The notes under the pieces were generated by a model, which did no database searches, had not been told where the DNA came from, and saw nothing but the letters and a program-made list of their open reading frames with translations. From Thalia democratica (Eukaryota), in the NCBI GenBank assembly GCA_965202585.1, contig OZ241826.1, positions 44,702,001 through 44,766,000 on the forward strand: DNA of 64,000 nucleotides, in the 5' to 3' direction. The translations under genes and the position numbers were made by a program. Every line of letters begins with the position of its first letter. Position 1 is the first letter of the stretch. This document shows positions 10,801-61,400 of the stretch, one piece after another.

Positions 10801-13800
10801 TTTGATTATCTCTTGAAATATTAAATAATCAATTGTCATGTTTATTTAATTTATAAAATATTACTTCAAAACAGCTAAAATTAACACGAACAACTTTAAT
10901 AAACTGTATATAGTATTTAAAAACTGCCTTAACAAATGTTTTGATGCGTAACAGTTATGCGCTAAAAAATTAGACATTTAACAGCAACTTAAAAATTTTG
11001 TAAAAAGTATTAAACCGAACTTACTGTGGGAGTCTTCCCCAGTAAGTATTGCAAGAAGAGACTCATCGTTAACTCTTCCTTCGTAAACATGAACAAAATC
11101 TTCATCGTTTTCCAAAGAGTATGTTTCGAAATGCAGTTCTACGCTTTGACCAAGCAGACCCAGTATTCTATATTCACACCTTGAAAAAAAATAAAGAAAT
11201 AGTTAAAAAGTTTTAGAATAGTTTTTCATTAAGTTATTTTAAACCTGATGTCGTTATCATAAGGTTCTGGCCAACCAGGACTAGCAATATAGCCTTGGCT
11301 AACGTTGAAAAATGTTTTGCTACAGAATCCTTCTTTTTTCGGTAGAGATACAGGTACGTCTAGATTTAGTTTAACAAAAAAGCTTTAGATCATTTTAATA
11401 AAGCAAACAACATTGCTTTTAAAACAAGTATTTAAAAACTTTTCCTTAGTTTTTACTTGTACCACCTAACACGTTTTTAATTTATTAACAATAACAAAAC
11501 AATAATTTAAAAAATTAAATCAAGTCAATGTCAGGCATACTAAATGGTATTTAAAAGTTCAATAGAAACAAACCAATGTTTGTGTTTTGTGAAATCCAGC
11601 TCAGAAAGTAGCGAACGGAAGAGAACACATCCGGGCTGCTTTTCACCGCGCAACCGGTGCTCCAGCTGATGACTCCGGTCAGCTCGAACCTGCCGTCTTC
11701 AGTTCGGCAAATCAGTGGCCCTCCGCTGTCTCCCTGAGTTTTTAAATATGAAAAAGTATGTAGGCGTAATTAAAAAAGAGATTAATTTTTTTATGGCGTA
11801 AGCGGTGAAACAAAAAAAAATTAAAAATGTATGCTAAAACTAGTTGATCATTTAGACAATAGTTAGCAAAACTTTGAATTTTTCTCCCTAAGCAACGAGC
11901 ATGTAAACCCACGTGACAAATTCCAACTCCTCCAGTGTCCGGATAGCCAGCGCACAGCATTCTGGGAGTCACCATTCCGGCGTACCACTTTTCCTCACAT
12001 TCTCTGTAGTCGACGATTGGGACCGACGCCTCTTTGAGAACGTTGGACGGCTTACCGTTTTCCACAGTCCTTCCAAACCCCAGGATTGTGCACACTTGTC
12101 CTTTTTAAATAAGTGTATAAATAAAATCACAGCGCAAAAATATCAAGTATTGTCTAGCACAGTTTTTATTCTGATTTTCTTAGTACTGATTAGTATGTAC
12201 GAGAAATGCTTAAGGAAATAAATCTTCTATAATGTGCACAAAAAGTAAATTTTGAAGTAACAAACCTCTCAAAGGTTGGTTATCTACATCAGGAAGGCAA
12301 ATAGGGGAAATGTTGTTACTAAACTCAATGGTTTTCTTCAGTTCAACCAACGCAACATCCCAATCTGGTATGTGTTTCCAGCTCTTATACTCCCTGTTAA
12401 AAGTTAAAATTGAAATTTGATATATATGAAACTTTTAGGCTAAAAAGCATCTTTAAGAAATTAAATCATTTAAAATTTATATCATTTGAAATAAATATTC
12501 TTTACAAGTCAAAATTTACTTGTGTATTATAGTTCGCTTGATCTGATGTTTTTCTCTGTACATGTTCGCTTTCAAGCGAGTGTCGCCCATTATGACATAA
12601 AATAACGACGGATCCAACCCGTCAAAACAGTGGGCGACAGTTAGTACGAACTTGTTTGAAATCACAGTACCACCACATTGGTGCACGCCTTTCGCCTACA
12701 ATTTGTAGTGAGCTAATAACTAATTTATGACATAATACTGCGCATTCAAAAATTTATCCAAACTCACAAGTATTCAAGTTTTTTAATATATCAATTATTA
12801 AAAAAACGGTATATTATTTAAAATTATTTTTAATACTTTTAATTTTTTTTTTTTTTTTATAATAAACTTGTAATGAAGCCATCCAAGGCCAGTGTCTAGG
12901 TTTAGAGTCCTGTCCTCCAATAATTCGTAAAATAACGGAGTCTTCTTTTTCCACATCACTTGTTCTTGTTCCACATTGGTACGGCAAACATTTTGCCTCC
13001 CATACTTTATCTAAACAAATTAAAAGTTTTTTTTTGATTTTGTTTGCATTTATTAATATTTTTTGAAAAAAAAATTATTTCTTATTATAATCTTTGTAAT
13101 GTGATATATTAGTAAATGTTTGTAGTTTAACCAAAGTTTTAATTTTTTTATAACCTTTACCTTCTAAAGTTAGAACAAACGAGTCTTCATTGTTTAAAGA
13201 ATCTACAAGGCTTTGTGGAAACTCACTATTTTGACTACTTTCTGTTTATAAGTTTAAAAAATAAATGTAAACACAAGTTACAAGCTTTAATCAAGTATAG
13301 TACAAAAAGAAATTAGTAAATAGTAAGAAAAAAAAATTGTAGAGTTAAGAATAAATGCTTAACATCAAAGTATGAAATAAGAAAAAAGTATATTTATTGA
13401 CATATTTGGTTTGAATAAAAACAAACTTTTAATGTAATATACATTTTTTCATTATAAGTAACTTCAGCTAGTTAAGAAAATAAAAACTAATTTCAAACAA
13501 AAAAAATATACTTACTTTGCTTAAGAGTGTAAAACTGACGAAAGTAGTCTTTAAAAGACAAAGCAGGTAGTAGCTTTAATGGCAAAGTAGCTTTTTGAAA
13601 ACCTTGTTGTTGGCATGCAGAATTAGCAAAATCCTCACTTATGCTTTCCCCAACTACTATTCCAAAGTCCTTGTCGTGTAGTTTCAATTGGAACAACTGT
13701 AATTTCATTGGTAATTATTGATATTGAATATTTATTACAACTATTTAAGATATAAGTTTAATTAAAAGTATATAATTATATAGTTAATATATTAAGTATA

Positions 13801-25800: not shown

Positions 25801-28800
25801 TTCCTTCAGAAAAAAATCATTTGTAAGTAGTATTTTTTGAAGCAATGTTTGTTAACGTTTAAAAAAAAGTAAACACATTTTGTTCTAAAACTAAAATATA
25901 AAAAATATTAAGTTTTAGAACAGTTTTTTGAAATAAATAAACGTTAAGCTTTAAAAACGTAAAAGAAACAGTTCTTAATAGTTTGAATATTTTAGGGAAA
26001 TAGCTGCGGTTTCAAAGTCGCTATGGAAAATTTATCAAATTACATTTCATTTCCGACTTGCTGACACCTGTCACTTAAATAACATATAAAAAACTTTGAT
26101 GTTTTACTCAGACTACTTTTAAACCAAAAAAAATTGAATGTTAAACTAGCTTTATTTATTGAATATATGTATAATAAAATAGATAACTTATAGATGTAAT
26201 TTAACTTTATTAAATGTGCTCTATGTTTTCAACGTACCTTTTTAGGTCATCTTTTAAAACTATGACAAATGAGTCGTATATTCCTGTTTTAGGTGCTTGC
26301 CACTCGACAAGTACAGTCAGTTCGTCAGTTTTAGATGCTTTCAGGTTTCGTACTGAATCTGGAGCTGTTGAATGAGCAACAGTTTAAATATTTAGTTATC
26401 TCATTACTTTTATCGTTTAAAATACTTTATAAAAAATTGCTCAAAAATCTATTTTACATATGTAGTGATTATTATCAGTTCTTTAAGAACAGTGTACAAG
26501 CTGCTTAATTATAACCATGTAATCAACAAAACCACTTAAGCTGAAATATATGTATTCAAACTATTTTTTAAGCTAACCAATAACTAGATTTGTTCTTGAC
26601 TTTTTTGATTTCAGTTGACGAGGTGCTTTAGATTCCACAAAAATCTGATACCGGTAACCTAGTTTCAAATTAGTCAAAAATCCGGATATTTCATGTTTGG
26701 AAGTAGTTGAAGCAGCTATTTGTACTGGTTTACTTTTGGGGTTTGTTGTAATCTTTAATTATTTTAAAACCAATAAGAAACATAAAGCATTACAGAAACT
26801 TTATAAAAGGTTTTAAGGAAAACTAACGTAATATGAAGTTATACTGTTATCTCCCAGCCAATTTACTTGAGCTATCTGAAAATTAAATAAAAATAAAATA
26901 AAATAAGACCAGCTTTTCTACATATTAACTTACATTTTTTCCATCTTTTAATTGGTTTGCTTTAACACTTTTCGGATTAGTAGACTCTGTTTTATACATT
27001 TGTTAAGCAAACAAAATCAAATCAGTTTTCTTTAAAAACAATTTGTAATAATTTCAAAACCTGTATTGATAACAAAACTTGTTGGTTGTAACTTTTTCGT
27101 CCTTGAGTACGGATGAATTGTAATTTTGTAAAACGTCGAAGGCTTTAGATTTCTGAAAATGTGCTGTCGACTTGTCGTTGAAATTGACAGAGAACTCCAA
27201 ATTTTTTCACCAACTGTCGGGTTGATTTCCAGTTTGTAGGTCCACCAAACAGTTGTAGAGTTTGCTACCCAAGGTGGAAACCAGTACAACTTTATGCTCG
27301 ATTGAGTGTTCCAAAACCTTATGAGTCTAAGCCTGGATGACTTTTCAGCTGAAATGTTTATAGCAAAATTTAAAAGCAATGTTTTATTTTTTAGTTTACA
27401 ATGTTTTCTAAAGTAAGAAGCAAAATATTATTACAATAATAATAACAACTGTTTATCAAAACTACTTTCATACTTTGTTTTAAGGTGTTTTGTATGAGCC
27501 CGTTAGATTTTTTTATAGCGTCAACATCCGATAGGAAATGTCTGTTTTGTGATTCTTCGCAAAGTGTCGCGGAAATGACGTTTTTACCTTCAACTTTCAT
27601 TTGCTCCAAGTTTTTGTACATCACTATATTTTGCTAAAAGTGTGTTTGCAAATATACTTAAGTACTTTGAGCTATAATCATTTTTTAAACTATCTTATTA
27701 CCTTGCAACTAAGATTGTTAGTATTTTATGGATATATATTTATATAAAAAAGTTTAGGAATTAGCAACTTACCAAGTACATAATTTTCTACACTATTACA
27801 CATTCACATCATCATTAAAATAATCAATAAATACATGAAAAGTTAATTATTTTAATTTTCGAGAATTAGAAACAAAAACATAAAAATACATATGTAAACT
27901 AAGAAAAATACTTATATGAAGTCAAAATAGATACTAAAATATAGTAATAATTAAAACTATCTTTTATCTGTCAGTTTAATTCATCTCTTTTTTATGGCTT
28001 CTTTTCAAAAGTTCAATAATAGAAAGAAGGGTAAAACGTAATGCTATAAAAATCAATTAAATGCTATCGCTTTTATTTCAAATTGTAACTCTTCTTATTA
28101 ACTGGAATAACTTTAGTCTAAAAATAAGTGAGATAGTATACTAAAAAGAGCAAACATAATAAATTTTCAAATGACATACTTAAAAGTATGAATACTAGCA
28201 ACTAATACCTTTTTGCAATTTGGTTGTTTTAATTTTGAATGACCCAGCAGTTTAAGATCTACTCTTATATTTCAGTTGTAAAAAAGATTAGATGATAAAG
28301 CCTAAGTTATACAATAAATAATAATAATAAGGATACATGAAATCGATTGAGAATAATAAACAGAAGTACAATATAAAAGAGTTATACCATGTATGGCGGA
28401 GACACGAACTTGGTGAGCTGCGATCTCGTTTTCGCCTTCCTCATTGACAATGACATCACTCTGATGTAGGAGTCTTGCAACTGTTTCGACTTGTATAAAT
28501 CTTGAGACTCTCCTCCATTTAAAATAATTAGAACTGAAGGCCTATCATTTTTTAATTAGGATTTGTTTAACAAATATAGTTGATTTTCAACTTTCAGCCT
28601 TTAAAATAAGCTGAATGCAAAGTCTAATAACTATAGATGTACTTTACAAATAAATGTACAATATGATGTATCTTTTTTTTTTACTATACAAATAGATGTA
28701 TATCAATTATGTTTACAAGTCTTTAATTGGAAAATATAAAAAGATACTATACAAAATAAAATAAAAAAATTAAATTTTTACGTTAAACATGGTAATCAAT

Positions 28801-39668: not shown

Positions 39669-42600
39669 CTTACAACACATTTCATCATGTTTGTTTTACT
39701 TTTTTCATTTTATTTCTTTAACTACAAAATAAGAAGGTCACAACTCTAAGCGCTATTTTTTAAATTAATGTAGTTTTACAACATTAAGCTATTTAGCTTT
39801 TACATTGTAGCATAATGTGATGATTATATAATTTGAAACTTTTAAATTATTTTAAAATAAAGTAGCTTATAGTTTTACCCTAGATATTAGCTTAAAGCCT
39901 TTAATACTGTTTATTATATAAGTTGAATGATATATAACCTTTAAATAAATCTTGGTATAATGACATTAAAAAAACACAAAGAAAAGAGTAAATGCAACTG
40001 TAATCTACTACTTGTTTTCCAACAAGCTCTGTTTCAGTTTACTTAAAGACTAAATTTAAGCGTTTTGTTTACTTAAACATACCATTGAAATAGTTTAAAA
40101 CTCATAAAGCTACTAAAACTTAAAAGTAAACAAACAAAAGTATCGCGGTATGTATAAATGTATCAAAGACGAGTTGTCAAATAAATTTATTGAACAAAGT
40201 GTAAACTTTTTAAGATTTATCATTTTGTGCATCAAATTTAAAAATTTTTCAAAGTAATTTTTATAAATGGACTATACTTTTCATTTTTAGTTGAATTAAA
40301 AATAAAAGGTGCACTTTATGAAAAAAATATTTTCATTTTATAATGAAACAGCCAGATTTTTTGTAGAAAGTAAAATAAAACTACCTCATTTGTTGATGTT
40401 CTTAGAAAATTGTCTTAAAATCAGTTCTACGAAAGGTTTTGCAAACTTTTTACTTTAGCTAAACACAATTATTAGAAAAAAACTCTTCTTAACTGACTAA
40501 ATTAACGATAAGCTTTTTAGAAAAAAAATTTAATACAGTAGTATAACTTGATACTACTTTATAAAAACAACTGCTAATTACAGAAATTTAAATTAATAAT
40601 TTACCTATAAGCAAATAGCTTTGCGCCGATTTATTTGTTTTTTTCTTCCATGCCTAAATAATATTTGATTAGTAGTTTGCAGTTGAAACAGGTAAAAATC
40701 TTGAATATTGCAAATATAATATTATTTGAAAATAATTCTATCACTTATGGTAAATTAGTCGTATAATTTATTTTTTTAAATAGAAAATTAAGGTATTTAA
40801 ATTATAATTTATTAAGCATCAAAAACAAGTTTAACAAATAGTTTTTTGATGTCTTCAAAAAAATCAAAATTACTGTTTAGAAAAAATAGTAAACTTAAAG
40901 TAAGTATTTTTAATGAAACAAAATAAGTATGTATTTTTAAAATAGTGAATATTTTATATTTTACAACTCTGGTCATAGTAAAGCTGCTTTAAAACTGATT
41001 TAGTAAAATATCATTTGTATGTATTTCTTATGCAATTTTAAAGTAAGCTTTTATAAATAAATTATTAAACAAAAATTGTTAATACTAAAACGTTTAGTCT
41101 TATAAATATTGCTCTTACCTAGTTTCTTTTTTTTTTAATGTTGAGAATTTTTTTTTTTAATTCTCAGACACATTGTACTTTTTTTTTAATTTTAATTTTC
41201 TTGATACTTAAAACTCATAACTCCGAAACTTCAGTTCAGTGCGACTTTGGTTAACTGTAAAAAAGAACTTAAAACAAAACTTTCAAAAAATTTTGATAAA
41301 CAAACTCCTTTTAAAATCATTTTAAAAAACAATGCATACTTGTATTATTTCTTTTTATAATAAAAGCTTTTTACTAAAAAGTAATTAGCAAATTATTTCT
41401 TTTATACTTCTGTATAAAGATGTACTTAAAAAATTCCAATGCTTATTTTCTTTTTTTAGATCTACCACGGGCTTTAAAAACATTTAATAGCTTTCCCGAG
41501 TCCCGACTCGTACTCTACCTTTTTATTTTTTTTTTATTTAAAGCATTCACAACTGAAAAGGCCTTCAAAAGCACTCAATCTTGTAACAAGCTAATAAACC
41601 TACTTTTTGATAGTGAAAACATGAAACATAGTTAAGAATTTTTTATTCTACATCTATAACATATAGTAAAATATCAAACACTTTTAAATTCTTTAAAGTT
41701 AGTAATTAATAGACGTTTTTAAAAACAACTAGTTGAATCTATTTACTGGACTTCTAAATTTTTCTTAGTTTTAGTAATAAAATTTGTACTATTTATACTA
41801 AAAAACATATATATTGTTTCTAGGAAACATGAAACATACAGATAGGAACATTGTGTAATAATAAAAATTTTAACTCATAAGTTTGTGTATTAAGATTTTA
41901 AAGTAAATGCTTAAGATAAAGAAATTCAAGCAAAGAGATAAAACTGAAATAAACGAAGATCAAAACTAAACAGACTTATTTTTAAAAAAGTTTACCTCAT
42001 CACTAGATATTTTAGTATATTTAAACCTATTATTTTTTAAAATTACCACCAGATTATTTTGTTTAGCATCTAACCTAATAACTAAGTTAATAAATTGATT
42101 ACTTAAACAATAAATAGTAGTAATTTGTTGCGTAGTACATTTCAACTGTGAACAATACTAGCAAAATCTTGTTGATGTCGACTCTAATCTAATACTTTAT
42201 GAATGTTTTGTTTATTTTTTTGTTATCGTTGCCCAATTTTAACTTTTACTTAAGTAGTTTATGCAATGTAAAAACAATTAGTTTTCCGGCTACAATGAGT
42301 GTCAAAACCATGACTAATGCTAATTTAAAAAAGGTTTAAACCTTAAACTAAAAAGAAACTTGTCAAACTGCTTGAGACTGGCAGAGATGCCAGATTCTGA
42401 ACAAGTGTTTTTTGTTTTAACTTAAAATGTTATGCTCGAGTTCTGTAACAATTCTTATATAGAAATTTGACAGCTACTAATGTTAAATTGTAAGAAAAGA
42501 TCTTTTTTTAATATCACAAGTTAAATTTATATATTTTAATTTTAGTTCTACGAAGTTAATTTTTACTGTAGTCTAACGAAAATTTTTTGTCCAAGTTTTA

Positions 42601-49373: not shown

Positions 49374-51245
49374 TTAATTTCAAACAAGTGTTCGTTTATA
49401 ACCAATTTTGTTAAATAACTTGATTTTATTAATTTTGAAAATTAAAAAAAAAAGTTTTTAAGGATTTAAAAAACTCTGGATGACTTAGGACAGTTTTTTG
49501 ACTAAAAGTTTGGCAAACATATTTGAAAGCATGAACTTGATGTCAATTTTTATAGAAATTATAAAAGTCAATTAATTTTTGAGGTATAGTAATTTTTGTA
49601 AAACATTTCTAATACAAACTTAGGGACCATATCTTTTAAAAAATTCAAAAAATCCTATATACTTTTTGAGCTAGAGACATAACATTTTTAGAAAAAGTTT
49701 GTTAAACAAGTTGAATTTGTTCAATTGATTATTTAATTTAAAAAATATTAAAGAGTAAAAAATTTAAATAAAAAATTGAAACAAAAAAAATATGTAATTA
49801 AAAATAATAAAAAATAAATTAAGTATTTTCCTATAACTATTTTTTATTTTTATTATATAATTATTTAAATACAGTAATAGACTTGCTAAGCAAGTTTTAA
49901 GAAGATTGCTTAACAATGAAAAATAAATGTTCTAATTGTTATCTTAAATCTACTACTTATATTTAAATCATTTCAATGTAGGATTTTTTTAGTTTTTTTT
50001 TTTTTTTTAATTTAAAATTTCAAAAAATAGTGTTTACCCCCTATGCCTTTAAACTATACAACAAATGGTTTTTGAAAGTCTTTAACTCATAGATAGATGG
50101 AAAATGTAGATGTTCAGTTATTAATCCAATTTTAAATAGAAATGAAAAAATAAGTTTTTTATCTATACATTTGAATCATTAAATTTTTACAAAAATTACT
50201 TTGTCTCAAAAGTTAATAAAATTTTTATATTCCTGTCTATAAAAACTTCCCTGTAGTTACACTTTAAGTTTTTATTCTAAACTAATGTTAAATTTTATAA
50301 AACAACTTCCATCAACCTCCCTATGCCCTTAAACATAAAACTATGCTTATAACATGGCTACAACGCATTTAAGCCACTCAGACTACTAGTTTGATATGTT
50401 ACAAAACTCAGGCCAACTCAAACTAGTTTGAAAAATTTCAGGTTGTTTGAGTAGGCGAATTTAAATTTCTTTTACAACTTAATAATCACTTTTTTCTTAA
50501 TGTATTTTAAATATTAAAGCTCTTTTGTTATCATATATATTTTCGTATGTATTTAGGCTTGAATGACTTAAAAGTTGTCTAGGTTTTAGGCTAACTTAAA
50601 TTAGTTTAATGTTACTCAAGCTCTTTTTTGCTTCAAAATGCAACTCTTTTATAATGATACATAATCAATTTATATCAAAATTTTTACTCCCCAATCATTT
50701 ATTATTTGTAGATTTCCCATTCAATTGATTTGAATTTTATTAACTAAAATACAAGTTCATCCCAATTTAATCATTTCTCATCTTAATGTACATATTAAAA
50801 ATAGATGGTTACCTAAAAGTGTTTTGTTGTTACATATGTTAAAACCTAATTTACTAATTTTAAGACTCTCCAAAAATATAGTTGTTTGTAAAATTTTTAA
50901 CTTGTATAACTGTTGGATCATTACTTAGTTATGATAATATTGTCTTCAGTTTTCTTCTTTCATATATAAATTCAGCCAGTGGTGAAATAGTTCTTATTGT
51001 TTCTTAATGAACTGTAGTTGAATAAAATCAAGGCTTTTTTCATTTTCTTTAAACAGTTGCAACTTTGTAAATGTTAAATTTTTATATTCTATTGAAGATA
51101 ATTTCTGTGTGTTTATACAACTTTAATCTGTTATAGTTTTATGATATAATTTAAATTAGTAGTAATTAAAAAAATTATCAAGATAGAGAAAAAAAAACAT
51201 AAAAAATATATGTATTTTTCAACTTAGTGTTTATAGTTTAATACC

Positions 51246-51255
51246 TTTTTTACAG
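51246..51255 (+). promoter_or_regulatory. Candidate 3' splice acceptor (5'-UTR intron or trans-splice site) 48 nt upstream of the RPB2 ATG
   Basis: TTTTTTACAG at 51246-51255 matches the acceptors used elsewhere in the window. Confidence 0.4.
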
Positions 51256-51303
51256 ATAATAAATCTTTAAGCTCTAAAGATAAAGAACAAACAATAACCT
51301 ACT

Positions 51304-54300
51304 ATGAGTATGTATGATATTCATGATCAGGATATTGATCCTGCAGAGGAATACAATGACAATGGCAATGAAATTTCTGTAGACATGTGGCAAGAGTCTT
51401 GCTGGATTGTCATCAGTTCTTACTTTGATGAAAAGGGGCTTGTAAGGCAGCAGCTGGACTCTTTTGATGAGTTTATTCAAATGAAAGTCCAAAGAATTGT
51501 GGAAGACTCTCCAACAATTGAACTTCAGGCTGAAGCTCAGCATACTACAATGGACATACAAGAGCCAACTAGATACCTCTTGAAATTTGAACAAATTTAT
51601 CTGTCCAAGCCTACGCATTGGGAAAAAGATGGTGCCCCAAGCCCAATGATGCCAAATGAAGCAAGATTGAGAAATTTGACTTACTCAGCTCCTCTCTATG
51701 TTGATATCACTAAGACTGTTATTAAACCTGATGAAGCTCCAAGAACTAGCCAAAACTTAAAAATGTTTATTGGTAAAATACCTATTATGTTAAGATCAAC
51801 GTATTGTTTATTGAGTAACATTACAGATCGTGATCTTACAGAATTAAATGAGTGCCCATTAGATCCTGGTGGTTACTTTATTATTAATGGATCAGAAAAA
51901 GTACTTATTGCCCAGGAAAAGATGGCAACTAATACTGTCTACGTTTTTAAGAAAAAAGATCACAAATACACATACACAAGTGAAATCCGAAGCTCTTTAG
52001 AGAACAGTTCTAGGCCAACAAGTTCTATGTGGGTAAATTTGCATGCAAAAGGTGGAGGTCAAGGTGCCAAAAAAAGTGCAGTTGGTCAAAGAATCACTGC
52101 AATTATTCCATACATTCGCCAAGAGATTCCAATAATGATTGTGTTCAGAGCATTGGGTTTTGTTGCAGACAGAGACATATTGGAACATATTATATATGAT
52201 TTTGATGATCCTGAGTTTATGGAAATGGTCAAACCTTCTCTTGATGAAGCTTTTGTTATCCAAGAACAAAATATCGCCTTGAACTTTATTGGTACAAGAG
52301 GTTCAAGAGCTGGCGTTACTAAAGACAAGCGTATTAAATATGCTAAAGATCTTCTTCAAAAAGAGATGTTACCTCATGTTGGAATAAGTGACTTTTGTGA
52401 AACCAAAAAAGCTTACTTTTTGGGTTATATGGTCAATAGACTTATGTTAGCTGCACTTGGTCGCAGAGAAGTTGATGATCGTGATCACTATGGTAACAAG
52501 CGTTTAGATCTTGCTGGACCACTTTTGGCATTTTTATTTAGAGGTCTGTTTAAAAAACTAATGGGAGAAGTTAGGTTGTATGCCCAAAAGTTTATAGACA
52601 AAAACAGAGACTTTAATGTTGAACTAGCAATTAAAACAAGGATTATAACTGATGGCTTAAAATATTCACTTGCTACTGGAAATTGGGGAGACCAAAAGAA
52701 AGCTCACCAGGCTCGTGCTGGGGTCTCTCAAGTTTTAAACAGACTAACCTATGCATCAACACTGTCTCACTTGAGAAGGTTAAACTCTCCTATTGGAAGA
52801 GATGGTAAGCTTGCTAAGCCACGTCAATTGCATAATTCACTATGGGGTATGATTTGTCCTGCAGAAACTCCTGAGGGTCATGCTGTAGGCCTTGTGAAAA
52901 ACTTAGCATTGATGGCATACATATCTGTTGGTTCTCAGCCAAGTCCTATTTTAGAGTTTCTTGAAGAATGGTCTATGGAAAATTTGGAAGAAATTTCACC
53001 TTCCACTATTGCTAATGCAACTAAAATATTTGTGAATGGATGTTGGGTAGGTATTCATCAGGATCCTGAGCAACTAATGACAACTTTAAGAAAACTCAGA
53101 CGTGATATGGATGTTATTGTGTCTGAAGTTTCTATGGTCAGGGATATTAGAGAACGTGAAATACGTATATACACTGATGCTGGAAGAATTTGTAGACCAC
53201 TGCTAATTGTAGAAAATCAAAAGCTTCTACTAAAGAAAAACCACATTGATCAACTAAAAGAAGAATATAATCCTATCAGGTGGCAGGACCTTGTTCAAAT
53301 GGGTGTGGTTGAGTATATTGACCCACTTGAAGAAGAAACAATTATGCTTGCTATGTTCCCTGAAGATTTGCAACAGAAAGGTGAACAATATTGTAGTACA
53401 TACACTCATTGTGAAATTCATCCTGCTATGATTCTTGGTGTGTGTGCTTCTATTATTCCATTTCCTGATCATAACCAATCACCACGTAACACATATCAAA
53501 GTGCTATGGGTAAGCAGGCTATGGGTGTGTACATCACAAATTTCCATGTTCGAATGGATACTTTGGCTCATGTTTTATACTATCCACAGAAGCCTCTGGT
53601 CACTACTAGATCTATGGAATACTTACGATTCAGAGAGTTGCCAGCAGGTATCAATGTTATTGTAGCAATTGCTTCATACACTGGTTACAACCAAGAAGAT
53701 TCTATTATTATAAACAAAAGTTCAATTGATCGTGGGCTCTTTAGGTCAGTCTTTTATCGCTCATACAAAGATGCTGAAAACAAAGGTTCTTATGAAATGG
53801 AAGAGACTTTTGAAAGGCCTTCCAGAGACAGCTGTGTTGGCATGAGGCATGCTTTGTACGACAAACTTGATGATGATGGTCTCATTGCTCCTGGTACTCG
53901 TGTGTCTGGAGATGATGTTGTTATTGGTAAGACTGTCAAACTTGAAGAGAAAGATGATGATGTTAGCAATGTTTCATCAAGGTTCAAGAAAAAAGATGGG
54001 TCCACATTTTTAAGGTCTAGTGAAACTGGTATTGTTGACCAGGTTATGGTCAGTATTAACTCTGATGGTTACAGATTCACAAAAGTAAGAGTGCGCTCTG
54101 TTCGTGTGCCTCAAATTGGAGATAAATTTGCTAGTCGCCACGGTCAGAAAGGTACTTGTGGAATTACATATTCTGCACAAGATATGCCTTTTACATGTGA
54201 AGGAGTTCAACCTGATTTGATTGTCAACCCTCACGCTATCCCATCCAGAATGACCATTGGTCACTTGATTGAGTGTCTTCAAGGTAAAGTTTCCGCTAAC

Positions 54301-54849
54301 AAAGGTGAAATTGGTGATGCCACACCTTTTAATGATGCTGTTAATGTGCAAAAGATATCTAACTTGTTGCGAGAGTATGGGTACCAGCAAAGAGGTAATG
54401 AGGTGCTTTACAATGGTCATACAGGGCAAAAGATGAACACCCAGATTTTCTTTGGACCTACTTACTACCAACGTTTGAAGCATATGGTAGAAGACAAAAT
54501 ACATTCTCGTGCTCGCGGCCCCGTCCAAATTCTCAATAGACAGCCTATGGAAGGTAGGTCTCGTGATGGAGGTTTGCGTTTTGGAGAGATGGAACGTGAT
54601 TGTCAAATTGCTCATGGAGCAGCCCAGTTCTTGAAAGAACGTTTGTTTGAAGCTTCAGATCCTTATGCTGTGCACGTTTGCAATATGTGTGGTCTGATTG
54701 CAATTGCAAACGAGCGCTCTAACACGTTTGAGTGCAGAGGTTGCAACAACAAAACTCGCATATCACAAGTCAAGATGCCCTACGCCTGCAAACTGCTGTT
54801 CCAAGAGTTAATGTCCATGTGTATTGCTCCTCGTATGGTGGTCAACTGA
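51304..54849 (+). CDS. POLR2B: DNA-directed RNA polymerase II subunit RPB2, 1181 aa, single coding exon
   Basis: Uninterrupted ORF with metazoan RPB2 motifs: [80 protein letters not shown], zinc ribbon [18 protein letters not shown]. Confidence 0.98.
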
Positions 54850-55445
54850 GTAGAAACATTACGTTGATTGTAAACGACAAAGTTTTTGAATGTGAACATA
54901 ATTTACCAAGTGTAATATAAGAATGTATAACTTTAATTTTGCTTTCAACTTTATTAGAGTTACTTTTTTAAACGAATTCATAAAGCGTTTTTGTTTGTAT
55001 TTACTACAATTCAATTTTAGAAAATTAAAAGTATTGGTTTACATTTAGAAAATATAAATTACTAATGTTTCATAGTATTTCTAGAAAATAATATCGTTTT
55101 CATATTTTTTAATAATGTAGTATTAAAGCAAAAAATAATATATATTTGTAATTTTACTGAGTTGAAAAATGTTTTAATTTGTGTATAACGTGTAAAATTT
55201 TACCTTGTTTTAATTTTTTATTTTTTAAAATATTTTATATGGTAGATAAAATACCAGATGAAGGTAACTAACTGAAAAGTTTTTTTTTTACAATAAGTTT
55301 CAAAATTTCTCTGAAAACCTCTTAAATTAAAAAAAAAATCAAAGTACCTTTCTAAGTCTGTTTTTATTATTGAATAGGATTTTTATGAGGCTAATTAATA
55401 TTTTCAATGTTTCGTTCAAATCTTGACCATGAAAGTCGGGGAAGT

Positions 55446-58400
55446 ATGTTAAATCTTCGCAAAAAGAAGAAAAATATTAGAAGCATTGTTGTTGACACAT
55501 TAGACGCTCGCCTTTATTTTGAGTGCGTTTAAAAAAAAAGTTTTAATTAAGTTTTGACCTAAATCTAATGTTTTAATGTATCTGCGGATAGCTGCAATAT
55601 ATACTTTGTTTATGAATTTCAAGCTTTGTAATTTTTATATTGAAATAAGTACTTTTGTTTAACTCTTTTATGATGAGTATTTAAGTACAAGTTATTGAAA
55701 TCAAATTTCTTTCAATAGTATTTCAATATCCTTTTTAATTATAAAAAATTATAATAAAAGTGAACATAAGTTATAAAGATTCAAATTTTATACTGTAGCA
55801 TTGAAATTGGATCAAAAGCGAGAGTTGTTTTTGATCTTGTCTGCCACACAATTGGACTGCGTGAAACAAACTTCTTCGGGCTGGCAATCGATCAGGACAC
55901 AAGCGAGTTTCCGTTTTGGTTAAAACTGGATAAAAAGGTTCACATATAAAATATTATTATGATATTATAACAACTTTAAAAATCTTAATGTTTCTTATTG
56001 TAATAATTAAAAGAAATCTTTAGCTGGTTAGTGTTCTTAAACTCTTACTAAGCTACAATTTATCATTCGAATTATATCAATATAGTTTTTAAAAGTTTTA
56101 TCACTTATATAAGTGTTTTAGTAATTTATTTTAAATATATAATCTACAGTTATTCGATCAAATAGCCCATATTTTCAAAGAAGATCAGAATGTAGTGCTG
56201 CAGTTTTATGCAAAGTATTTTCCCGAAAGCGCTGAAGACGAACTGTTGCAGGATGTCACTAAACATTATTTTGCACTTCAGGTTGATCATTTTTAGTTGG
56301 ATTAATTGTTTTTGATGGTATAGTAAAAATCTATTTTTAATTAAAATTTTTATAAGTTGTTATAAGAAACGCAGCATAAAATATTAATAAGCTTTAAGGT
56401 TACTAATATTAACTAATGTATACAGGGTTGCCAAAAAACTTGGAATTCTGGAAAAACCTGGAATTTGACAATTTAGGCTAAAAAATAACTGGAAAAACCT
56501 GGAATTGAAAAAAAATTGGAAAAAAAATTGGAATTTTGAAGCATAACCACTAAAAAACCTTGAATTTTAAAAAACAAAAATCACTAAAAAAAGCTGAAAA
56601 ATCCTGGAATTTTAAACAATTTTAACATCTTAAGTAGTAAGCTTTTAATTTGACACGAAAAATCTACCAATATATAAAAAAATTCCTTTATCATTGAAAT
56701 TTATTTATTAAAAAACACATTTAAAGTAGCTTTACAGTATCTTTTCAGTGTTATTATACTACTTAGCACAGTTTTTTACCTTAGACTTAGCTTTAAAAAA
56801 ATCAGGAATAAATTTCTCAAAAAAATTTGGCAACCCTGTGTATAATTTGGTAATTTTTTTTTTATTCAATAAAAAAATTGTAATTGTAAAAATATGTTAA
56901 ATTTTATTGGTTATAGTTGTCTCTTAACAGTATTGAATTATAAATGCCAATAAAACTAAAATTTAAATTTTTAAAGATATCCTCAATAATGTATTTATAT
57001 AATTGGTATAGATGTCTTTAAAGATTATAGTGTTTTAACGAACTTGACTTATTAATATTTTTAAAAAGTAAAGCAATTAGTTTTAAAAATATTGACCTTA
57101 CAGTTTAATGTAATGTTTTTACATATTTTATTTTTTACATATTTAAATTATAATTTTACCCTATTAACCACCCTGAACAGCAAAACTAATTTTGAAAATT
57201 TTAACAGTACCAGTTCTTAATACAGAAGAATTTTATAGAATGCACTTATGATGCTGGTGAACTGTTGGCAGCTTTTTCAGCTCAGATAAAAGTTAGTACA
57301 TTTTCATATGCCATTATAGTTATTTAAAGTGAAACTTTTAGCTAATATTATCTTGAAAATGTTAATCAACTTAAACTGAATAATATTTATTTGAGGCTCT
57401 AAAACTCATGGTATTTTGAATAATAAAAAATGTTTGTTAGTAAACAGTTTGCTGTAACTATAAATAATTTTAGTAAGCTTAATTTACTGTACATGTTTTA
57501 AAAACTTTCAGTTTCTAATGTAAATGATCTTTACAAAACTGTTGAAAAATATTTTACACGTTTAAAGTTTTTTTTGTACACAGTATGGAAACTTTAGTGT
57601 GATCGAGAACGAAAACCTGTGGGAAATGTATAAAGATTTTGTACCTCAGTCTACTTTAACCTACTACAACAATAATCAGGACGCAATAGTAAAAGCAGTA
57701 AGTATGTGGTAAGTATATCTGTATATGCTAAGTTTGTATATTAAATCTTAAATAACATGTTTATAAAGTATTCTTTATTATGATTAACAAGTCTAGTTAT
57801 TTGTGTAGTTTAATTTTTAAAACTGTCCACTTCTAATTTTAGTTTAGCTAGGTAAAAATCTATTTAAAGTAATACTATAAAGGCCACGACAAGTAAACCA
57901 CGATCAGTAACTTTGTTATGTGTGCAAATTATACACTCTTATATTCTGTCTCGTGCCAGAGAGCTCATTACGTAAGATGATTTTCACTATTGTTATCACT
58001 TAAACGTTTACAGGCACATAAAGCACAAGGGAATGTGCAGGGAGGCTGCAGAACACGAGTACGTTAACATTGTTCACGACTTTCCAATGTGTGGAGTCAA
58101 CTACTACGAAGTTCAGGTTGATGAGTTGTTCATTTAATTTTTGATTTTATAACTATCGAGCTACTATGTCAATTGCTTCCAATCTCAGGTTAATTAAATA
58201 GTTTGTTCGTCTAAATCGGTGATTACTTATTAGTTTTAAAAAATTAAAGTATCATAGTTCTTTTTACCTACAAAGGGTGTGTTTTCTATTTAAAATACAT
58301 ATAGCTTCCACTTTGACCAAGTCAAACACGTTACAGCAAATTTTAACTATCTTAAGTTTCTGCAAATTGAAATATTTAGCACAGCTTTGATTGTTCACCA

Positions 58401-61400
58401 AATGCTTAGTCATAGCAGATCTTTTTCTTGCAGATATAATTTTTACAGACTTCTTTCTTTTTCCTTTTCAGCTGATTTTAATAACTTATCAATTCAAGCG
58501 GGTATATGTTTTTTGACCCTAAGATTATATTAAAATTAACTGAAAAGTTTATCTTTATGTTAGTTTTTTAAGAATACTTTACTTTCTGATTCCATATACC
58601 GTTTTAGCCAATAAAACGGCATAACTAGATTTGTATTTATAAAGTTAAACAAAACATGATTCGTTTAACCGTAAAAAAACATAAAAAATCTACAAGCTGT
58701 TACAACAAAAAAAAGTAGGCTTATCTTGTTTCTTTTTTAGTATTAAAATAATCCTAATTTTAAAATAAATTTAAAAACAAAAAAAAAGTGCAAAAGCATT
58801 TTGTGAGCTACTACTTTAAGGCTTCTTACTTTTATTGTAATAGATTATTAATAATTCACTAGCTATAATTTTGGGTTACATCGAAACTTAGTTTTTAAAA
58901 AGATTAAAAGTAGTTTGTACAAGATTTTAATCCCTATTTCCACTTCAATGTGGTTTGGGTCCACTGTGTAATGGAGTTCTAACATTTCTTTTTATAAAAC
59001 TAAATTTACAAAACCTTATTACAAAAACTTAAACGAAAGCTTGAAGTATGATCTTCTAGTCATTTTTTATAGGATACAAAAGTTTTAATTTTATTTTGAG
59101 ATAAAATCAAATCAATATTTAAAAAAAAATAGTCAATTTTATAAAAATTTTCCGATAATAGCCTATGCAACGCAGTTTTTTATATCGTGAGTCTGGACGT
59201 TAAAATAATCAATAACATATTTTTTATACCCTTTTTTTCGGATTAGAGAACTCAAATTCTCAAAAAATGTTTCTTCAGTATTAAAAGAAATAAAAAATAA
59301 ATCAAAATGTATTTTTTTTTCCACAATTATTCAGTTTTTTTTTTGTATAAGTATTTTAAATGAAATTTAGAAATTCCGTATAACGGTTTTTATTTTTAAT
59401 AATTAAAACTGAGAAAGTTTGAAAACGATTGCTTAAAAATTTGAGGAGATTTTTAGTACAATATTTTTTTGCTTTTTAGTTTGCTAAAATGTTATATCAT
59501 AAACTAAATATCAAACTTTCACAGGGCAGCAACGGCATCCTAGAAATAAGTTTAAGTTTTGAAAAACGGTCAAAAGTAGAATATAATTAGCAGGCCACAA
59601 AACCTGGAAAAACCTAGAATTTGATATTATAGGCCAAAAGAACCTTGAAAAACATGGATTTTTAAAAAAACCTGGAATTTTGAACAAAAAAAAAACTAGA
59701 AAACCTGGAATTTTAAACAATGTTTACATGTTAAGTAGTAAAATTTTAATTTAACACAAAAAATCTACCATAAAATAAAAAATTTGTCATCAACAACAAA
59801 AAATTTATTGAAAAACACATTTAAAGTAGTTTTACAGTATTTTTCAATGTTATTATACTACTTAACATAGTTTACCTTTAACATAGCTCAAATCTAAAAA
59901 TAGACCCAAAAATGTTTACTTTTAAAACCCTTGAAGAAATTACTCAAACACCAGTGGCAACCTTGTATAATCATTAAAAAAAATGCTAAAAACAGGGTTT
60001 TACCCTTATAGCATATATTATATTATCCTCATATCAAAATATCTTATTATAAACAAAATATCAACACAGGACAGCAACGGGGTGAACGCGTTGTTGGGAG
60101 TGAAAGCGGATTCGGTGTCGACTTACCCGATGACCGACAAAATAAACCCCACCACCACCGTGGACTGGAACTCCTTGGTTGACATGAGCTACACGGAGCG
60201 CAAGTTCACCTTCAAGTACGCCGTTCCAATGCCAGGTAGTTGTTTCAAGCAAATTAAAAACCTTTACTTTTGTTGATTTGTATAAATTTATTACATTTTA
60301 AAGATAAACTACGTTTTTTGACTTTTGGTTTATTCACTCAATTTTATTAGTTCACGAGTTCTTTCATGAAACGGTGTTTCACTCACTTAATCAATAAGAT
60401 TGTTGAGATCCTCAGTTTCAATTAATTCTTATTTAAACAAAGAAGGTTTCTTCTCTAATAGTTGTTACTTGAGGAAAAATTATATTTATGATATACCGCG
60501 CAGAAAATGACAACAAAAAGAAAGAGTCGTCGCTGAAGAGGTCGTTGAAGCTGGGCAGCCAGTTGAACTTGTCCACTGTGAACTTGAACAAGCACAGCAA
60601 CCACTACTACCTGGACCTGACCATCAACGTGAAAAACACCGACATGTGCAAATACGTGAGTTGAAAGTGTTTTTGATTAAAGTGTGACCAGGCGAAGTAG
60701 CCTGTATGGGTAGTTGTACAACTGAATGCGTTTTTTGTAGTTGAAGTTTAAACTAAAGTTCGGCCCATGATAATAAAAGAAAACTGATTCCTAGTGGTTT
60801 TTGAGATGATTTCATAATTCTAGACCCTTGTTTGGAATTTTTTGGATATTTTTATAACCTTGTAACTATATATAGCAATATGAAATTCATTAAAATACAA
60901 AAAAAAAAACTAGTTTTGAGAAAAAGTTTGTGTACTAATAAAATTACACAAATGTAATTTTCTAGTTGTAAAATTTCTTATCCATTTAAAATATTTTTTA
61001 TTTATTCAAACTACAACGTAGTAATAATAAATAATTTTAGTTTTAACAAAAAGGTAACAAAGTTGTTGATCTACATAAAAATAATACTAAATGTATCAGT
61101 TATAAAGTAAACAGCGTCAAATATTTTAACCAAAACTTTATTGTTAGCTGATAGACATCTGTAGGGGAAACCATTCATTGTACATGGAAAGAAGAAAGCT
61201 GGGTAGAAACATGGAGCTTCAGCAAATGAAAAGTCTAGCGCTCGAAGAAAAGGGTAGAAGAGAAGTTAGTTAAAAACTTATACTGAATTAAATACTCTTA
61301 AAGAAACTTGCTGTGAACTTTAGAACTGTTCGAATTCTTTTAGTTTTTAGTGTTTTTCTAAGAGTAATATAAATATTTGTAAGATGTTTTTCAATACAGA

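What the first reader, a model, noticed from the sequence alone, without database searches (positions are those of the whole stretch)
51304..54849. Core housekeeping gene RPB2 is intronless in an intron-dense genome
3.5 kb of CDS has no introns while neighbouring genes have one about every 150 coding bases; vertebrate POLR2B has over 20 exons. The ORF is intact with all catalytic motifs. This points to retroposition with replacement of the parent, or to a second expressed RPB2 paralogue, which would be unusual in animals. No poly(A) remnant or TSD is visible, so the event would be old.
Basis: partly seen in the sequence, partly recalled or inferred. Interest (0 to 1): 0.7.

Follow-up and report, generated by a model that had tools for sequence, protein, structure and literature searches.

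The report
Intronless sole RPB2 gene, salp genome
The only gene for the second-largest RNA polymerase II subunit in this pelagic tunicate (probably a salp) has lost all of the 20 or more introns that other chordates keep; it is a working, expressed gene, and the same wholesale loss happened separately in other tunicates, so it is a clear example of a known process, not a new kind of thing.

Summary
Window 51304-54849 (+) is one 1181-codon ORF encoding a complete RPB2 with intact catalytic motifs. The next gene, an ERM-like FERM gene, is cut into exons of roughly 70-140 nt.

It is the only RPB2 in the 802-Mb genome, so the "second paralogue" reading fails. It is not a cDNA artefact, because independent metagenome DNA contigs match it with their flanks. 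RNA-type contigs of close relatives carry the end of the tunicate spliced leader at an AG 47 nt before the ATG, and they end about 300 nt after the stop. Purifying selection is strong (dN/dS 0-0.017).

Ciona keeps 23 coding introns, and at least 17 sit at positions shared with lamprey or amphioxus. Their removal here was precise, which points to an mRNA-derived, reverse-transcribed copy. I found no poly(A) relic, target-site duplication, leader relic, parental remnant or informative synteny. In-situ cDNA conversion and retrogene replacement therefore cannot be separated.

The state is old and not unique. Styela clava has one RPB2 intron, at a non-ancestral position, and another tunicate contig has none. 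The intron-poor genes are not one clade (AU p = 0.008). RPA2 and RPC1 are also intron-poor here. This is a new member of a known kind, of moderate interest.

The parts
51245..51256 (+). Polypyrimidine tract plus AG (ccttttttacAG). This is the spliced-leader trans-splice acceptor, 47 nt upstream of the ATG.
   Evidence: Sequence. In close relatives the DNA-type contigs read ...TTTTACAG at this point (L025, L031). The RNA-type contigs read ...AAG or ...ATAAG instead, which is the 3' end of the tunicate SL ATTCTATTTGAATAAG. The SL sequence is given in PMC1488885 and occurs 1299 times in this genome. Trans-splicing is shown in relatives and inferred for the window copy.
51257..51303 (+). 5' UTR of 47 nt
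   Evidence: RNA-type contigs L026-L036 start 41-66 nt before the ATG and are colinear with this stretch.
51304..54849 (+). Uninterrupted RPB2 coding sequence (1181 codons plus TGA). It is the only RPB2 gene in the genome.
   Evidence: Comparisons with related contigs give dN/dS of 0-0.017.
54850..55146 (+). 3' UTR of about 300 nt. The poly(A) addition site lies near 55145. The hexamer ATTAAA at 55122-55127 is a weak candidate signal and is not conserved in one relative.
   Evidence: RNA-type contigs L026 and L027 end 301-303 nt after the stop in AAAAAA, where the window reads TTGTAA.
55407..60273 (+). Context only: the 5' part of the next gene on the same strand, an ERM-like FERM-domain gene split into many short exons. 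Pieces lie at about 55407-55519, 55797-55937, 56150-56290, 57976-58134 and 60070-60230.
   Evidence: FERM_N, FERM_M and FERM_C hits fall on separate ORF pieces. Its first ATG lies about 260 nt beyond the RPB2 poly(A) site.

Best explanation
This is the single, functional gene for the second-largest subunit of RNA polymerase II in a pelagic tunicate.

The ancestral chordate gene had at least 17 introns, probably 20-24. All were removed precisely, and the removal predates the split of relatives that now differ by dS of about 0.5. The most likely mechanism is replacement of the interrupted coding region by a reverse-transcribed copy of the spliced mRNA. That could have happened by gene conversion at the original locus (my estimate about 50%). 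It could also have happened by insertion of a retrocopy elsewhere, followed by loss of the parent (about 40%).

Today the gene is transcribed with an upstream outron and SL-trans-spliced at the AG at 51255-51256. It is translated from one exon and polyadenylated about 300 nt after the stop.

The same outcome arose separately in other tunicates, and it also affects other polymerase subunit genes.

Shown: single copy, intact ORF, precise intron absence, purifying selection, RNA contigs with SL ends in relatives, and non-monophyly of the intron-poor genes. Inferred: the reverse-transcriptase step and the route it took.
For: - Single copy: the only full hit in 802 Mb is the window itself.
- Ancestral introns: Ciona has 23, lamprey 24 and amphioxus at least 19. 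Seventeen Ciona positions match an outgroup in codon and phase.
- Precise removal: 20 of 23 Ciona intron sites align to the window without a gap within 6 residues.
- Real genomic DNA: metagenome contigs L012-L016 are colinear with window 50048-55843, flanks included. DNA-type runs hold 72-95% of the sampled words.
- Expression: four metatranscriptome runs hold 22-46% of the words. RNA-type contigs carry SL 3' ends and terminal A runs.
- Selection: 35-38 synonymous and 0 non-synonymous differences to the nearest contigs. dN/dS is 0.015-0.017 at dS 0.2-0.5.
- Conservation: 723 of 744 residues invariant in 19 other animals are kept.
- Recurrence: Styela clava RPB2 has 2 coding exons and L011 has 1. 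Holding window, L011 and Styela together as one clade is rejected (AU p = 0.008). Published phylogeny nests salps within ascidians (PMC13746493).
- Reverse transcription is plausible here: the SL 16-mer occurs 1299 times in the genome against 9 for the control, and some copies lie directly before ORFs.
Against: No direct trace of a reverse-transcription event survives. There is no poly(A) tract, target-site duplication or SL relic.

Under the recombination route, 5'-most introns are usually retained. Here even the ancestral intron at about codon 10 is gone. That would need a crossover within roughly 75-100 nt, or separate events.

Under the retroposition route one expects a new location, but synteny could not be assessed. 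The flanks of Ciona, Styela and L011 share nothing with each other either. Ciona's neighbour PARN lies on another chromosome here, which is weak evidence in scrambled tunicate genomes.

Confidence: 0.8

Rival explanations
1. Relocated retrogene that replaced its parent. A full-length processed mRNA was inserted at a new site, possibly into the outron or promoter region of the ERM-like gene just downstream. It became expressed, and the 20-plus-intron parent was then lost.
For: All introns are gone, including the one at about codon 10, which recombination seldom removes. There is no synteny with Ciona's RPB2 neighbours, and PARN lies on another chromosome. RPB2 is a single-exon gene lying about 260 nt upstream of a same-strand multi-exon gene. 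[quoted passage not shown] SL-tagged sequences followed by ORFs exist in this genome.
Against: There is no poly(A) relic, no target-site duplication, and no SL relic in front of the 5' UTR. Instead there is a normal polypyrimidine-AG acceptor. No parental remnant exists. Synteny is uninformative, because even Styela and Ciona share no flank genes.
Confidence: 0.4
2. In-situ loss: cDNA from the spliced mRNA recombined with the original locus, in one or several rounds, and erased the introns. The promoter, outron and trans-splice acceptor stayed in place.
For: A native-looking outron and acceptor lie directly before the 5' UTR, with no SL relic. Intron removal was precise. There is no second locus or remnant. 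Clavelina RPA2 shows the classic signature of this route, with one intron after codon 9 kept and the remaining 3.4 kb fused into one exon.
Against: The 5'-most ancestral intron is also lost. Styela's single intron sits at a non-ancestral position (window codon 45, phase 1), so it is not a retained 5' intron and gives no support.
Confidence: 0.5
3. Stepwise genomic deletions of individual introns, without an RNA intermediate.
For: Thaliaceans are reported to have lost some DNA-repair genes (PMC13746493 abstract). That could alter deletion spectra.
Against: Twenty or more independent exact deletions are required, yet 20 of 23 sites show no gap within 6 residues. The neighbouring genes keep dense introns.
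Confidence: 0.05
4. A second, specialised RPB2 paralogue, or a cDNA contaminant or misassembly.
For: None found.
Against: There is one RPB2 locus in the genome. Independent metagenome DNA contigs cover the gene plus 1.2 kb upstream and 1 kb downstream. The gene lies inside a 117-Mb chromosome-scale contig.
Confidence: 0.02

Closest known systems
mRNA-mediated (reverse-transcriptase) model of intron loss, as tested in PMC3652778
   Same: Introns were removed exactly and adjacent introns were lost together. The gene is a highly expressed housekeeping gene, and the genome shows signs of abundant reverse transcription.
   Different: The usual pattern is loss of a few 3'-side introns with 5' introns retained. 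Here every one of about 20 introns is gone, including one at codon 10.
'Orphan' retrogenes, meaning retrocopies whose parents were lost (PMC3548309)
   Same: An intronless sole copy of a gene that is intron-rich in relatives, with no parent in the genome.
   Different: Membership requires evidence of relocation. None could be obtained, and no poly(A), target-site duplication or SL relic remains.
Single-exon genes of Ciona operons (PMC2760879)
   Same: A tunicate, an SL-trans-spliced single-exon gene, and a same-strand gene starting a few hundred nt downstream.
   Different: Co-transcription with the FERM gene is untested. The gap of about 260 nt after the poly(A) site is longer than the near-zero spacers I recall for Ciona operons (from memory, not checked in the paper). 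Ciona's own RPB2 has 24 coding exons.
RPB2 of Styela clava (L010) and of the unidentified tunicate contig L011
   Same: Both are near-complete or complete losses of the ancestral introns in the same gene.
   Different: Styela has one 13.1-kb intron at a position not seen in Ciona, lamprey or amphioxus. The three genes are not a clade, so at least two losses were independent. Window plus L011 as sisters is not rejected (p = 0.29).

Membership tests
RPB2 (RNA polymerase II second-largest subunit) orthologue | Full set of Rpb2 domains 1-7 in order | tested here: met
   all seven Pfam domains, each covering the full or nearly full profile.
RPB2 (RNA polymerase II second-largest subunit) orthologue | Closer to Pol II than to the Pol I, III, IV or V second subunits | tested here: met
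   2317 bits to mammalian RPB2, against 835 for RPC2 and 381 for RPA2; it nests inside tunicate RPB2 with 100/100 support.
RPB2 (RNA polymerase II second-largest subunit) orthologue | Active-site and zinc motifs intact | tested here: met
   [19 protein letters not shown] and CxxC-x15-CxxC are all present; 723 of 744 pan-animal invariant residues are kept.
Processed retrogene (retroposed copy) | Lacks the introns of the ancestral gene | tested here: met
Processed retrogene (retroposed copy) | Poly(A) tract at the 3' end and flanking target-site duplications | tested here: not met
   the longest shared flank word is 8 nt, below the shuffle mean of 9.1, and there is only one run of six A.
Processed retrogene (retroposed copy) | Copy of the mature 5' end (here the spliced leader) in the DNA | tested here: not met
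   the DNA reads ttttttacag and not the SL, although SL copies occur 1299 times elsewhere.
Processed retrogene (retroposed copy) | Located away from the ancestral locus, or an intron-bearing parent exists | tested here: inconclusive
   There is no parent. No flank synteny exists between any pair of tunicate loci. PARN lies on another chromosome.
In-situ mRNA-mediated intron loss | Exact excision of introns, with neighbouring introns lost together | tested here: met
In-situ mRNA-mediated intron loss | Same locus as intron-bearing orthologues | tested here: inconclusive
In-situ mRNA-mediated intron loss | Bias towards keeping 5' introns | tested here: not met
   No coding intron is left, and the ancestral intron at about codon 10 is gone.
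SL-trans-spliced tunicate gene | mRNA 5' end carries the spliced leader, joined at a genomic AG | tested here: met
   Met in close relatives (ATAAG and AAG in place of the genomic ACAG). The window keeps the acceptor. The window's own RNA was not testable.

The most novel reading that the evidence does not exclude
RPB2, together with RPA2 and RPC1, may be a hotspot of recurrent, complete, mRNA-mediated intron erasure in tunicates. RPB2 alone would show at least two and perhaps three independent events. SL trans-splicing could be what lets intronless replacements be expressed at once, because any upstream transcription plus an AG suffices. That would make tunicates a natural system for watching essential multi-intron genes being swapped for processed copies.
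Probability: 0.35. Interest if true: 0.55.

Novelty: new member of a known kind. Interest (0 to 1): 0.4.

Why it matters
The locus shows that an essential, single-copy, 3.5-kb core transcription gene can lose more than 20 conserved introns completely and stay under strong constraint. Within tunicates this happened at least twice in the same gene. That is useful material for the debate on how introns are lost, by cDNA recombination or by retrogene replacement. It also bears on whether trans-splicing eases such replacements.

It does not reveal a new mechanism or a new gene. In passing, it gives the first evidence I know of, from metatranscriptome contigs, that a salp-like tunicate uses the same 16-nt spliced leader as Ciona.

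Tried and rejected
1. Read laying. No reads were therefore laid on the window. After, no letters of 55200-55241 were sent to any search tool. Later references stop at 55199 or start at 55250 or beyond. One local script aligned fetched contigs against the whole window file on the closed machine.

2. Synteny as a test of relocation. tblastx of the flanks of Ciona, Styela and L011 against the window and against each other gave nothing. An apparent bZIP-region hit was low-complexity noise. PARN lies on another chromosome. I judged all of this uninformative.

3. Styela's intron as a retained 5' intron. I first read it that way, as a signature of partial cDNA recombination. I rejected this because its position (codon 45, phase 1) matches no intron in Ciona, lamprey or amphioxus.

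4. A duplicated coding relic upstream of Styela exon 2. This was suggested by a tblastn overhang and turned out to be chance similarity.

5. Identity of the C7 gene. I first called the intronless gene on C7 RPC2. It is RPA2.

6. The SL+GT hits. I took them for SL RNA genes, but their downstream sequences differ and fall into repeat families, so I did not use them as SL genes.

7. The long branch. The window's branch of 0.23 in the tree is not matched by present-day relaxation (dN/dS about 0.016). I do not read it as decay of a retrogene.

Full report
**Observation**

Window 51304-54849 (+) is one ORF of 1181 codons. It carries all seven Pfam Rpb2 domains from end to end. It matches mammalian Pol II RPB2 structures at 2317 bits over residues 10-1179, far above the Pol III, Pol IV/V and Pol I second subunits. 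The [19 protein letters not shown] and C-terminal zinc motifs are present. Of 744 residues invariant in 19 other animals, 723 are kept.

The surrounding DNA is 22-35% GC. The next gene on the same strand is an ERM-like FERM gene. Its FERM_N, FERM_M and FERM_C matches lie on separate short ORF pieces spread over more than 4.9 kb. A published salp annotation gives a mean exon length of 160 bp, and about one gene in five is single-exon (PMC10686999).

**Whose genome**

The nearest proteins are tunicate RPB2s: Ciona and Phallusia at 89% identity and Styela at 88%. Vertebrates reach at most 84%. The same gene turns up in marine metagenome contigs; two record names point to Tara Oceans (L012's project code, recognised from memory, and L016's 'TARA ... 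METAG' label).

The genome is 802 Mb and very AT-rich. A comparative paper lists Thalia democratica at 790.7 Mb and 25.3% GC, and places salps inside the ascidians (PMC13746493). Earlier notes of this scan also guessed a salp. I treat "salp, possibly Thalia" as an inference.

**Copy number and reality of the locus**

A six-frame search of the whole assembly finds one RPB2, which is the window itself. The other hits are two different genes:
- A 1158-codon single ORF on C7, which is RPA2 and not RPC2 as I first thought.
- A multi-exon gene on C8, which I read as RPC2 (inferred; the locus itself was not classified).

No decayed RPB2 exons were found. Metagenome DNA contigs L012-L016 are colinear with window 50048-55843, non-coding flanks included, at 90-97% identity. 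DNA-type sequencing runs hold 72-95% of the sampled words. A cDNA misassembly and a second paralogue are both excluded.

**Ancestral gene structure**

I mapped annotated proteins exactly onto their genomic loci.

| Species | RPB2 coding structure |
|---|---|
| Ciona intestinalis | 24 coding exons, 23 introns |
| Lamprey | 25 coding exons, 24 introns |
| Amphioxus | at least 19 introns |

Seventeen of the 23 Ciona intron positions coincide in codon and phase with an intron in lamprey or amphioxus. Most of the rest lie within a few codons of one, in the same phase. The tunicate ancestor therefore had about 20 introns.

In the window, 20 of the 23 sites align without any gap within 6 residues. 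The removals were exact, which is the signature of an mRNA-derived copy and not of genomic deletions.

**Expression and transcript ends**

Indirect evidence is good all the same:
- Four metatranscriptome runs from two samples of one study hold 22-46% of the words of a 5.9-kb stretch.
- The protein's 90% cluster contains variants whose contigs are 3.6-3.9 kb long and begin 41-66 nt before the ATG.
- Contigs with longer upstream sequence (window, L025, L031) read ...TTTTACAG at the start of that leader. The short contigs read ...AAG (L026-L028) or ...ATAAG (L030, L032, L034) instead.
- ATAAG is the 3' end of the Ciona spliced leader ATTCTATTTGAATAAG (PMC1488885). That 16-mer occurs 1299 times in this genome against 9 for the reversed control.
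- Contigs L026 and L027 end 301-303 nt after the stop in AAAAAA, where the window reads TTGTAA.

The mRNA is therefore SL, then a 47-nt 5' UTR, a 3546-nt CDS, a 3' UTR of about 300 nt, and poly(A). The gene has an outron but no cis-intron in the mature region. This is shown in relatives at dS 0.2-0.5 and inferred for the window copy, which keeps the acceptor.

**Selection and age**

| Comparison with the window | Synonymous differences | Non-synonymous differences | dS | dN/dS |
|---|---|---|---|---|
| Nearest contigs | 35-38 | 0 (plus one in-frame 6-nt indel) | about 0.05 | 0 |
| More distant variants | 132-275 | 8.5-23 | 0.20 and 0.51 | 0.015-0.016 |

DNA-type contigs of those more distant variants are also uninterrupted. 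The intronless state therefore predates their divergence. The window's long branch in the protein tree (0.23, against 0.01-0.04 for ascidians) is not matched by present-day relaxation.

**Other tunicates**

Styela clava RPB2 has two coding exons of 115 and 3410 nt, separated by a 13,131-nt intron at window codon 45, phase 1. No other species examined has an intron at that position. Styela thus also lost all the ancestral introns.

Contig L011 comes from a 500-kb contig of an unidentified assembly with flank GC of 36%. It carries an uninterrupted 1181-codon RPB2 that is 89% identical in protein and 74% in DNA.

In the RPB2 tree the tunicates are monophyletic (100/100). Styela is sister to a group holding the window, L011 plus Phallusia (88/80), and Ciona.

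AU tests gave these results:
- Window, L011 and Styela held together as one clade: rejected (p = 0.008).
- Window plus L011 as sisters: not rejected (p = 0.29).

These groups were named after I had seen the tree, so the p values are indicative only. With the published species tree, and with Ciona's demonstrably ancestral introns, at least two of these wholesale losses were independent. A single old retrocopy sorted differentially among lineages is disfavoured.

**Other polymerase genes**

| Gene | State |
|---|---|
| RPA2, this genome | single exon |
| RPA2, Styela | single exon |
| RPA2, Clavelina | 27-nt first coding exon plus one 3402-nt exon |
| RPC1, this genome | two paralogues, each with a single ORF of more than 1260 codons |
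| RPB1, this genome | two loci, both multi-exon |
| RPA1, this genome | multi-exon |
| C8 gene read as RPC2, this genome | multi-exon |
| PRP8, this genome | the PROCN domain lies in a 744-codon ORF |

RPB2 is therefore not a lone oddity. It is one of several long housekeeping genes that have lost most or all of their introns.

**Route of the loss**

I looked for every hallmark that could separate a relocated retrogene from in-situ conversion by cDNA.
- There is no target-site duplication and no poly(A) relic.
- No SL relic lies upstream of the 5' UTR. A normal acceptor sits there instead.
- No parental remnant exists.
- There is no flank synteny between any pair of tunicate loci, and Ciona's neighbour PARN lies on another chromosome here.

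The native-looking outron, and the Clavelina RPA2 structure with its 5' intron retained, favour in-situ conversion.

Other points favour retroposition. One is the loss of the intron at about codon 10, only some 75-100 nt from the mRNA 5' end. Another is the gene's position just upstream of a same-strand gene. This resembles the single-exon 5' genes of Ciona operons (PMC2760879).

I put the reverse-transcription origin at about 0.8-0.9. Within it I put the two routes at roughly 50% in situ and 40% relocation.

**Verdict**

The "second paralogue" reading is refuted. The "retroposition with replacement" reading is possible but not demonstrated.

The case is a clear new example of a known process, made more interesting by its recurrence in tunicates. 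No paper held in the searched library combines the terms RPB2, intronless and retrogene, and two searches on tunicate or salp intron loss turned up no report of it. That library misses most subscription journals.

Noticed in passing
G000 genome-wide; examples L044-L073 (e.g. L063 = G000:C1:34989951-34992966, minus strand): The 16-nt Ciona spliced leader ATTCTATTTGAATAAG occurs 1299 times exactly, against 9 for the reversed control. The sequences that follow it fall into at least two repeat families, some with inverted SL-like ends. A few copies are followed within about 22 nt by an ATG and a long ORF (L063, at least 309 aa; L054 is a paralogue). These may be SL-tagged retrocopies or transposable elements that carry the SL.
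   Followed up: partly
L022 (G000:C5:37551001-37561000, minus strand) and L023 (G000:C9:8580001-8590000, plus strand): Two multi-exon RPB1-like loci (the largest Pol II subunit) share the same exon layout and are about 80% identical in domain 2, including NADFDGD. This may be a duplicated RPB1 beside the single RPB2. I did not check whether both are intact.
   Followed up: partly
L019 (G000:C7:21162001-21172000) and L020 (G000:C5:65261001-65271000): Two RPC1 (Pol III largest subunit) paralogues each lie in a single ORF of more than 1260 codons. The two loci differ strongly in GC content (27% and 37%).
   Followed up: partly
L024:3231-6704 (minus strand; G000:C7, about 17.806 Mb); also L074 (Styela) and L075 (Clavelina): RPA2 (Pol I second-largest subunit) is a single exon in this genome and in Styela clava. 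In Clavelina it has only one intron, after codon 9. RPA2 therefore looks intron-poor across tunicates.
   Followed up: partly
window 55146-55407: Only about 260 nt separate the RPB2 poly(A) site from the ATG of the same-strand ERM-like FERM gene. An acceptor-like ttattattgaatAG lies near 55376. This may be an operon-like pair, but it is untested.
   Followed up: no
L010:6116-19246 (Styela clava RPB2): The only intron of Styela RPB2 is 13.1 kb long and sits at a position not seen in Ciona, lamprey or amphioxus. It may have been gained after a complete loss.
   Followed up: partly
L017:6700-7600 (amphioxus RPB2 intron): An amphioxus RPB2 intron holds about ten tandem partial copies of the start of the following exon, about 20 codons each at 82-90% identity.
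   Followed up: no
window 11742-12095 and 27032-27379, minus strand: ORF pieces with a trypsin-domain match and a fibronectin type III match belong to multi-exon genes upstream. Window 40-51 kb has no ORF of 70 aa or more apart from one 71-aa ORF at 41420-41635 and is 22-26% GC.
   Followed up: no
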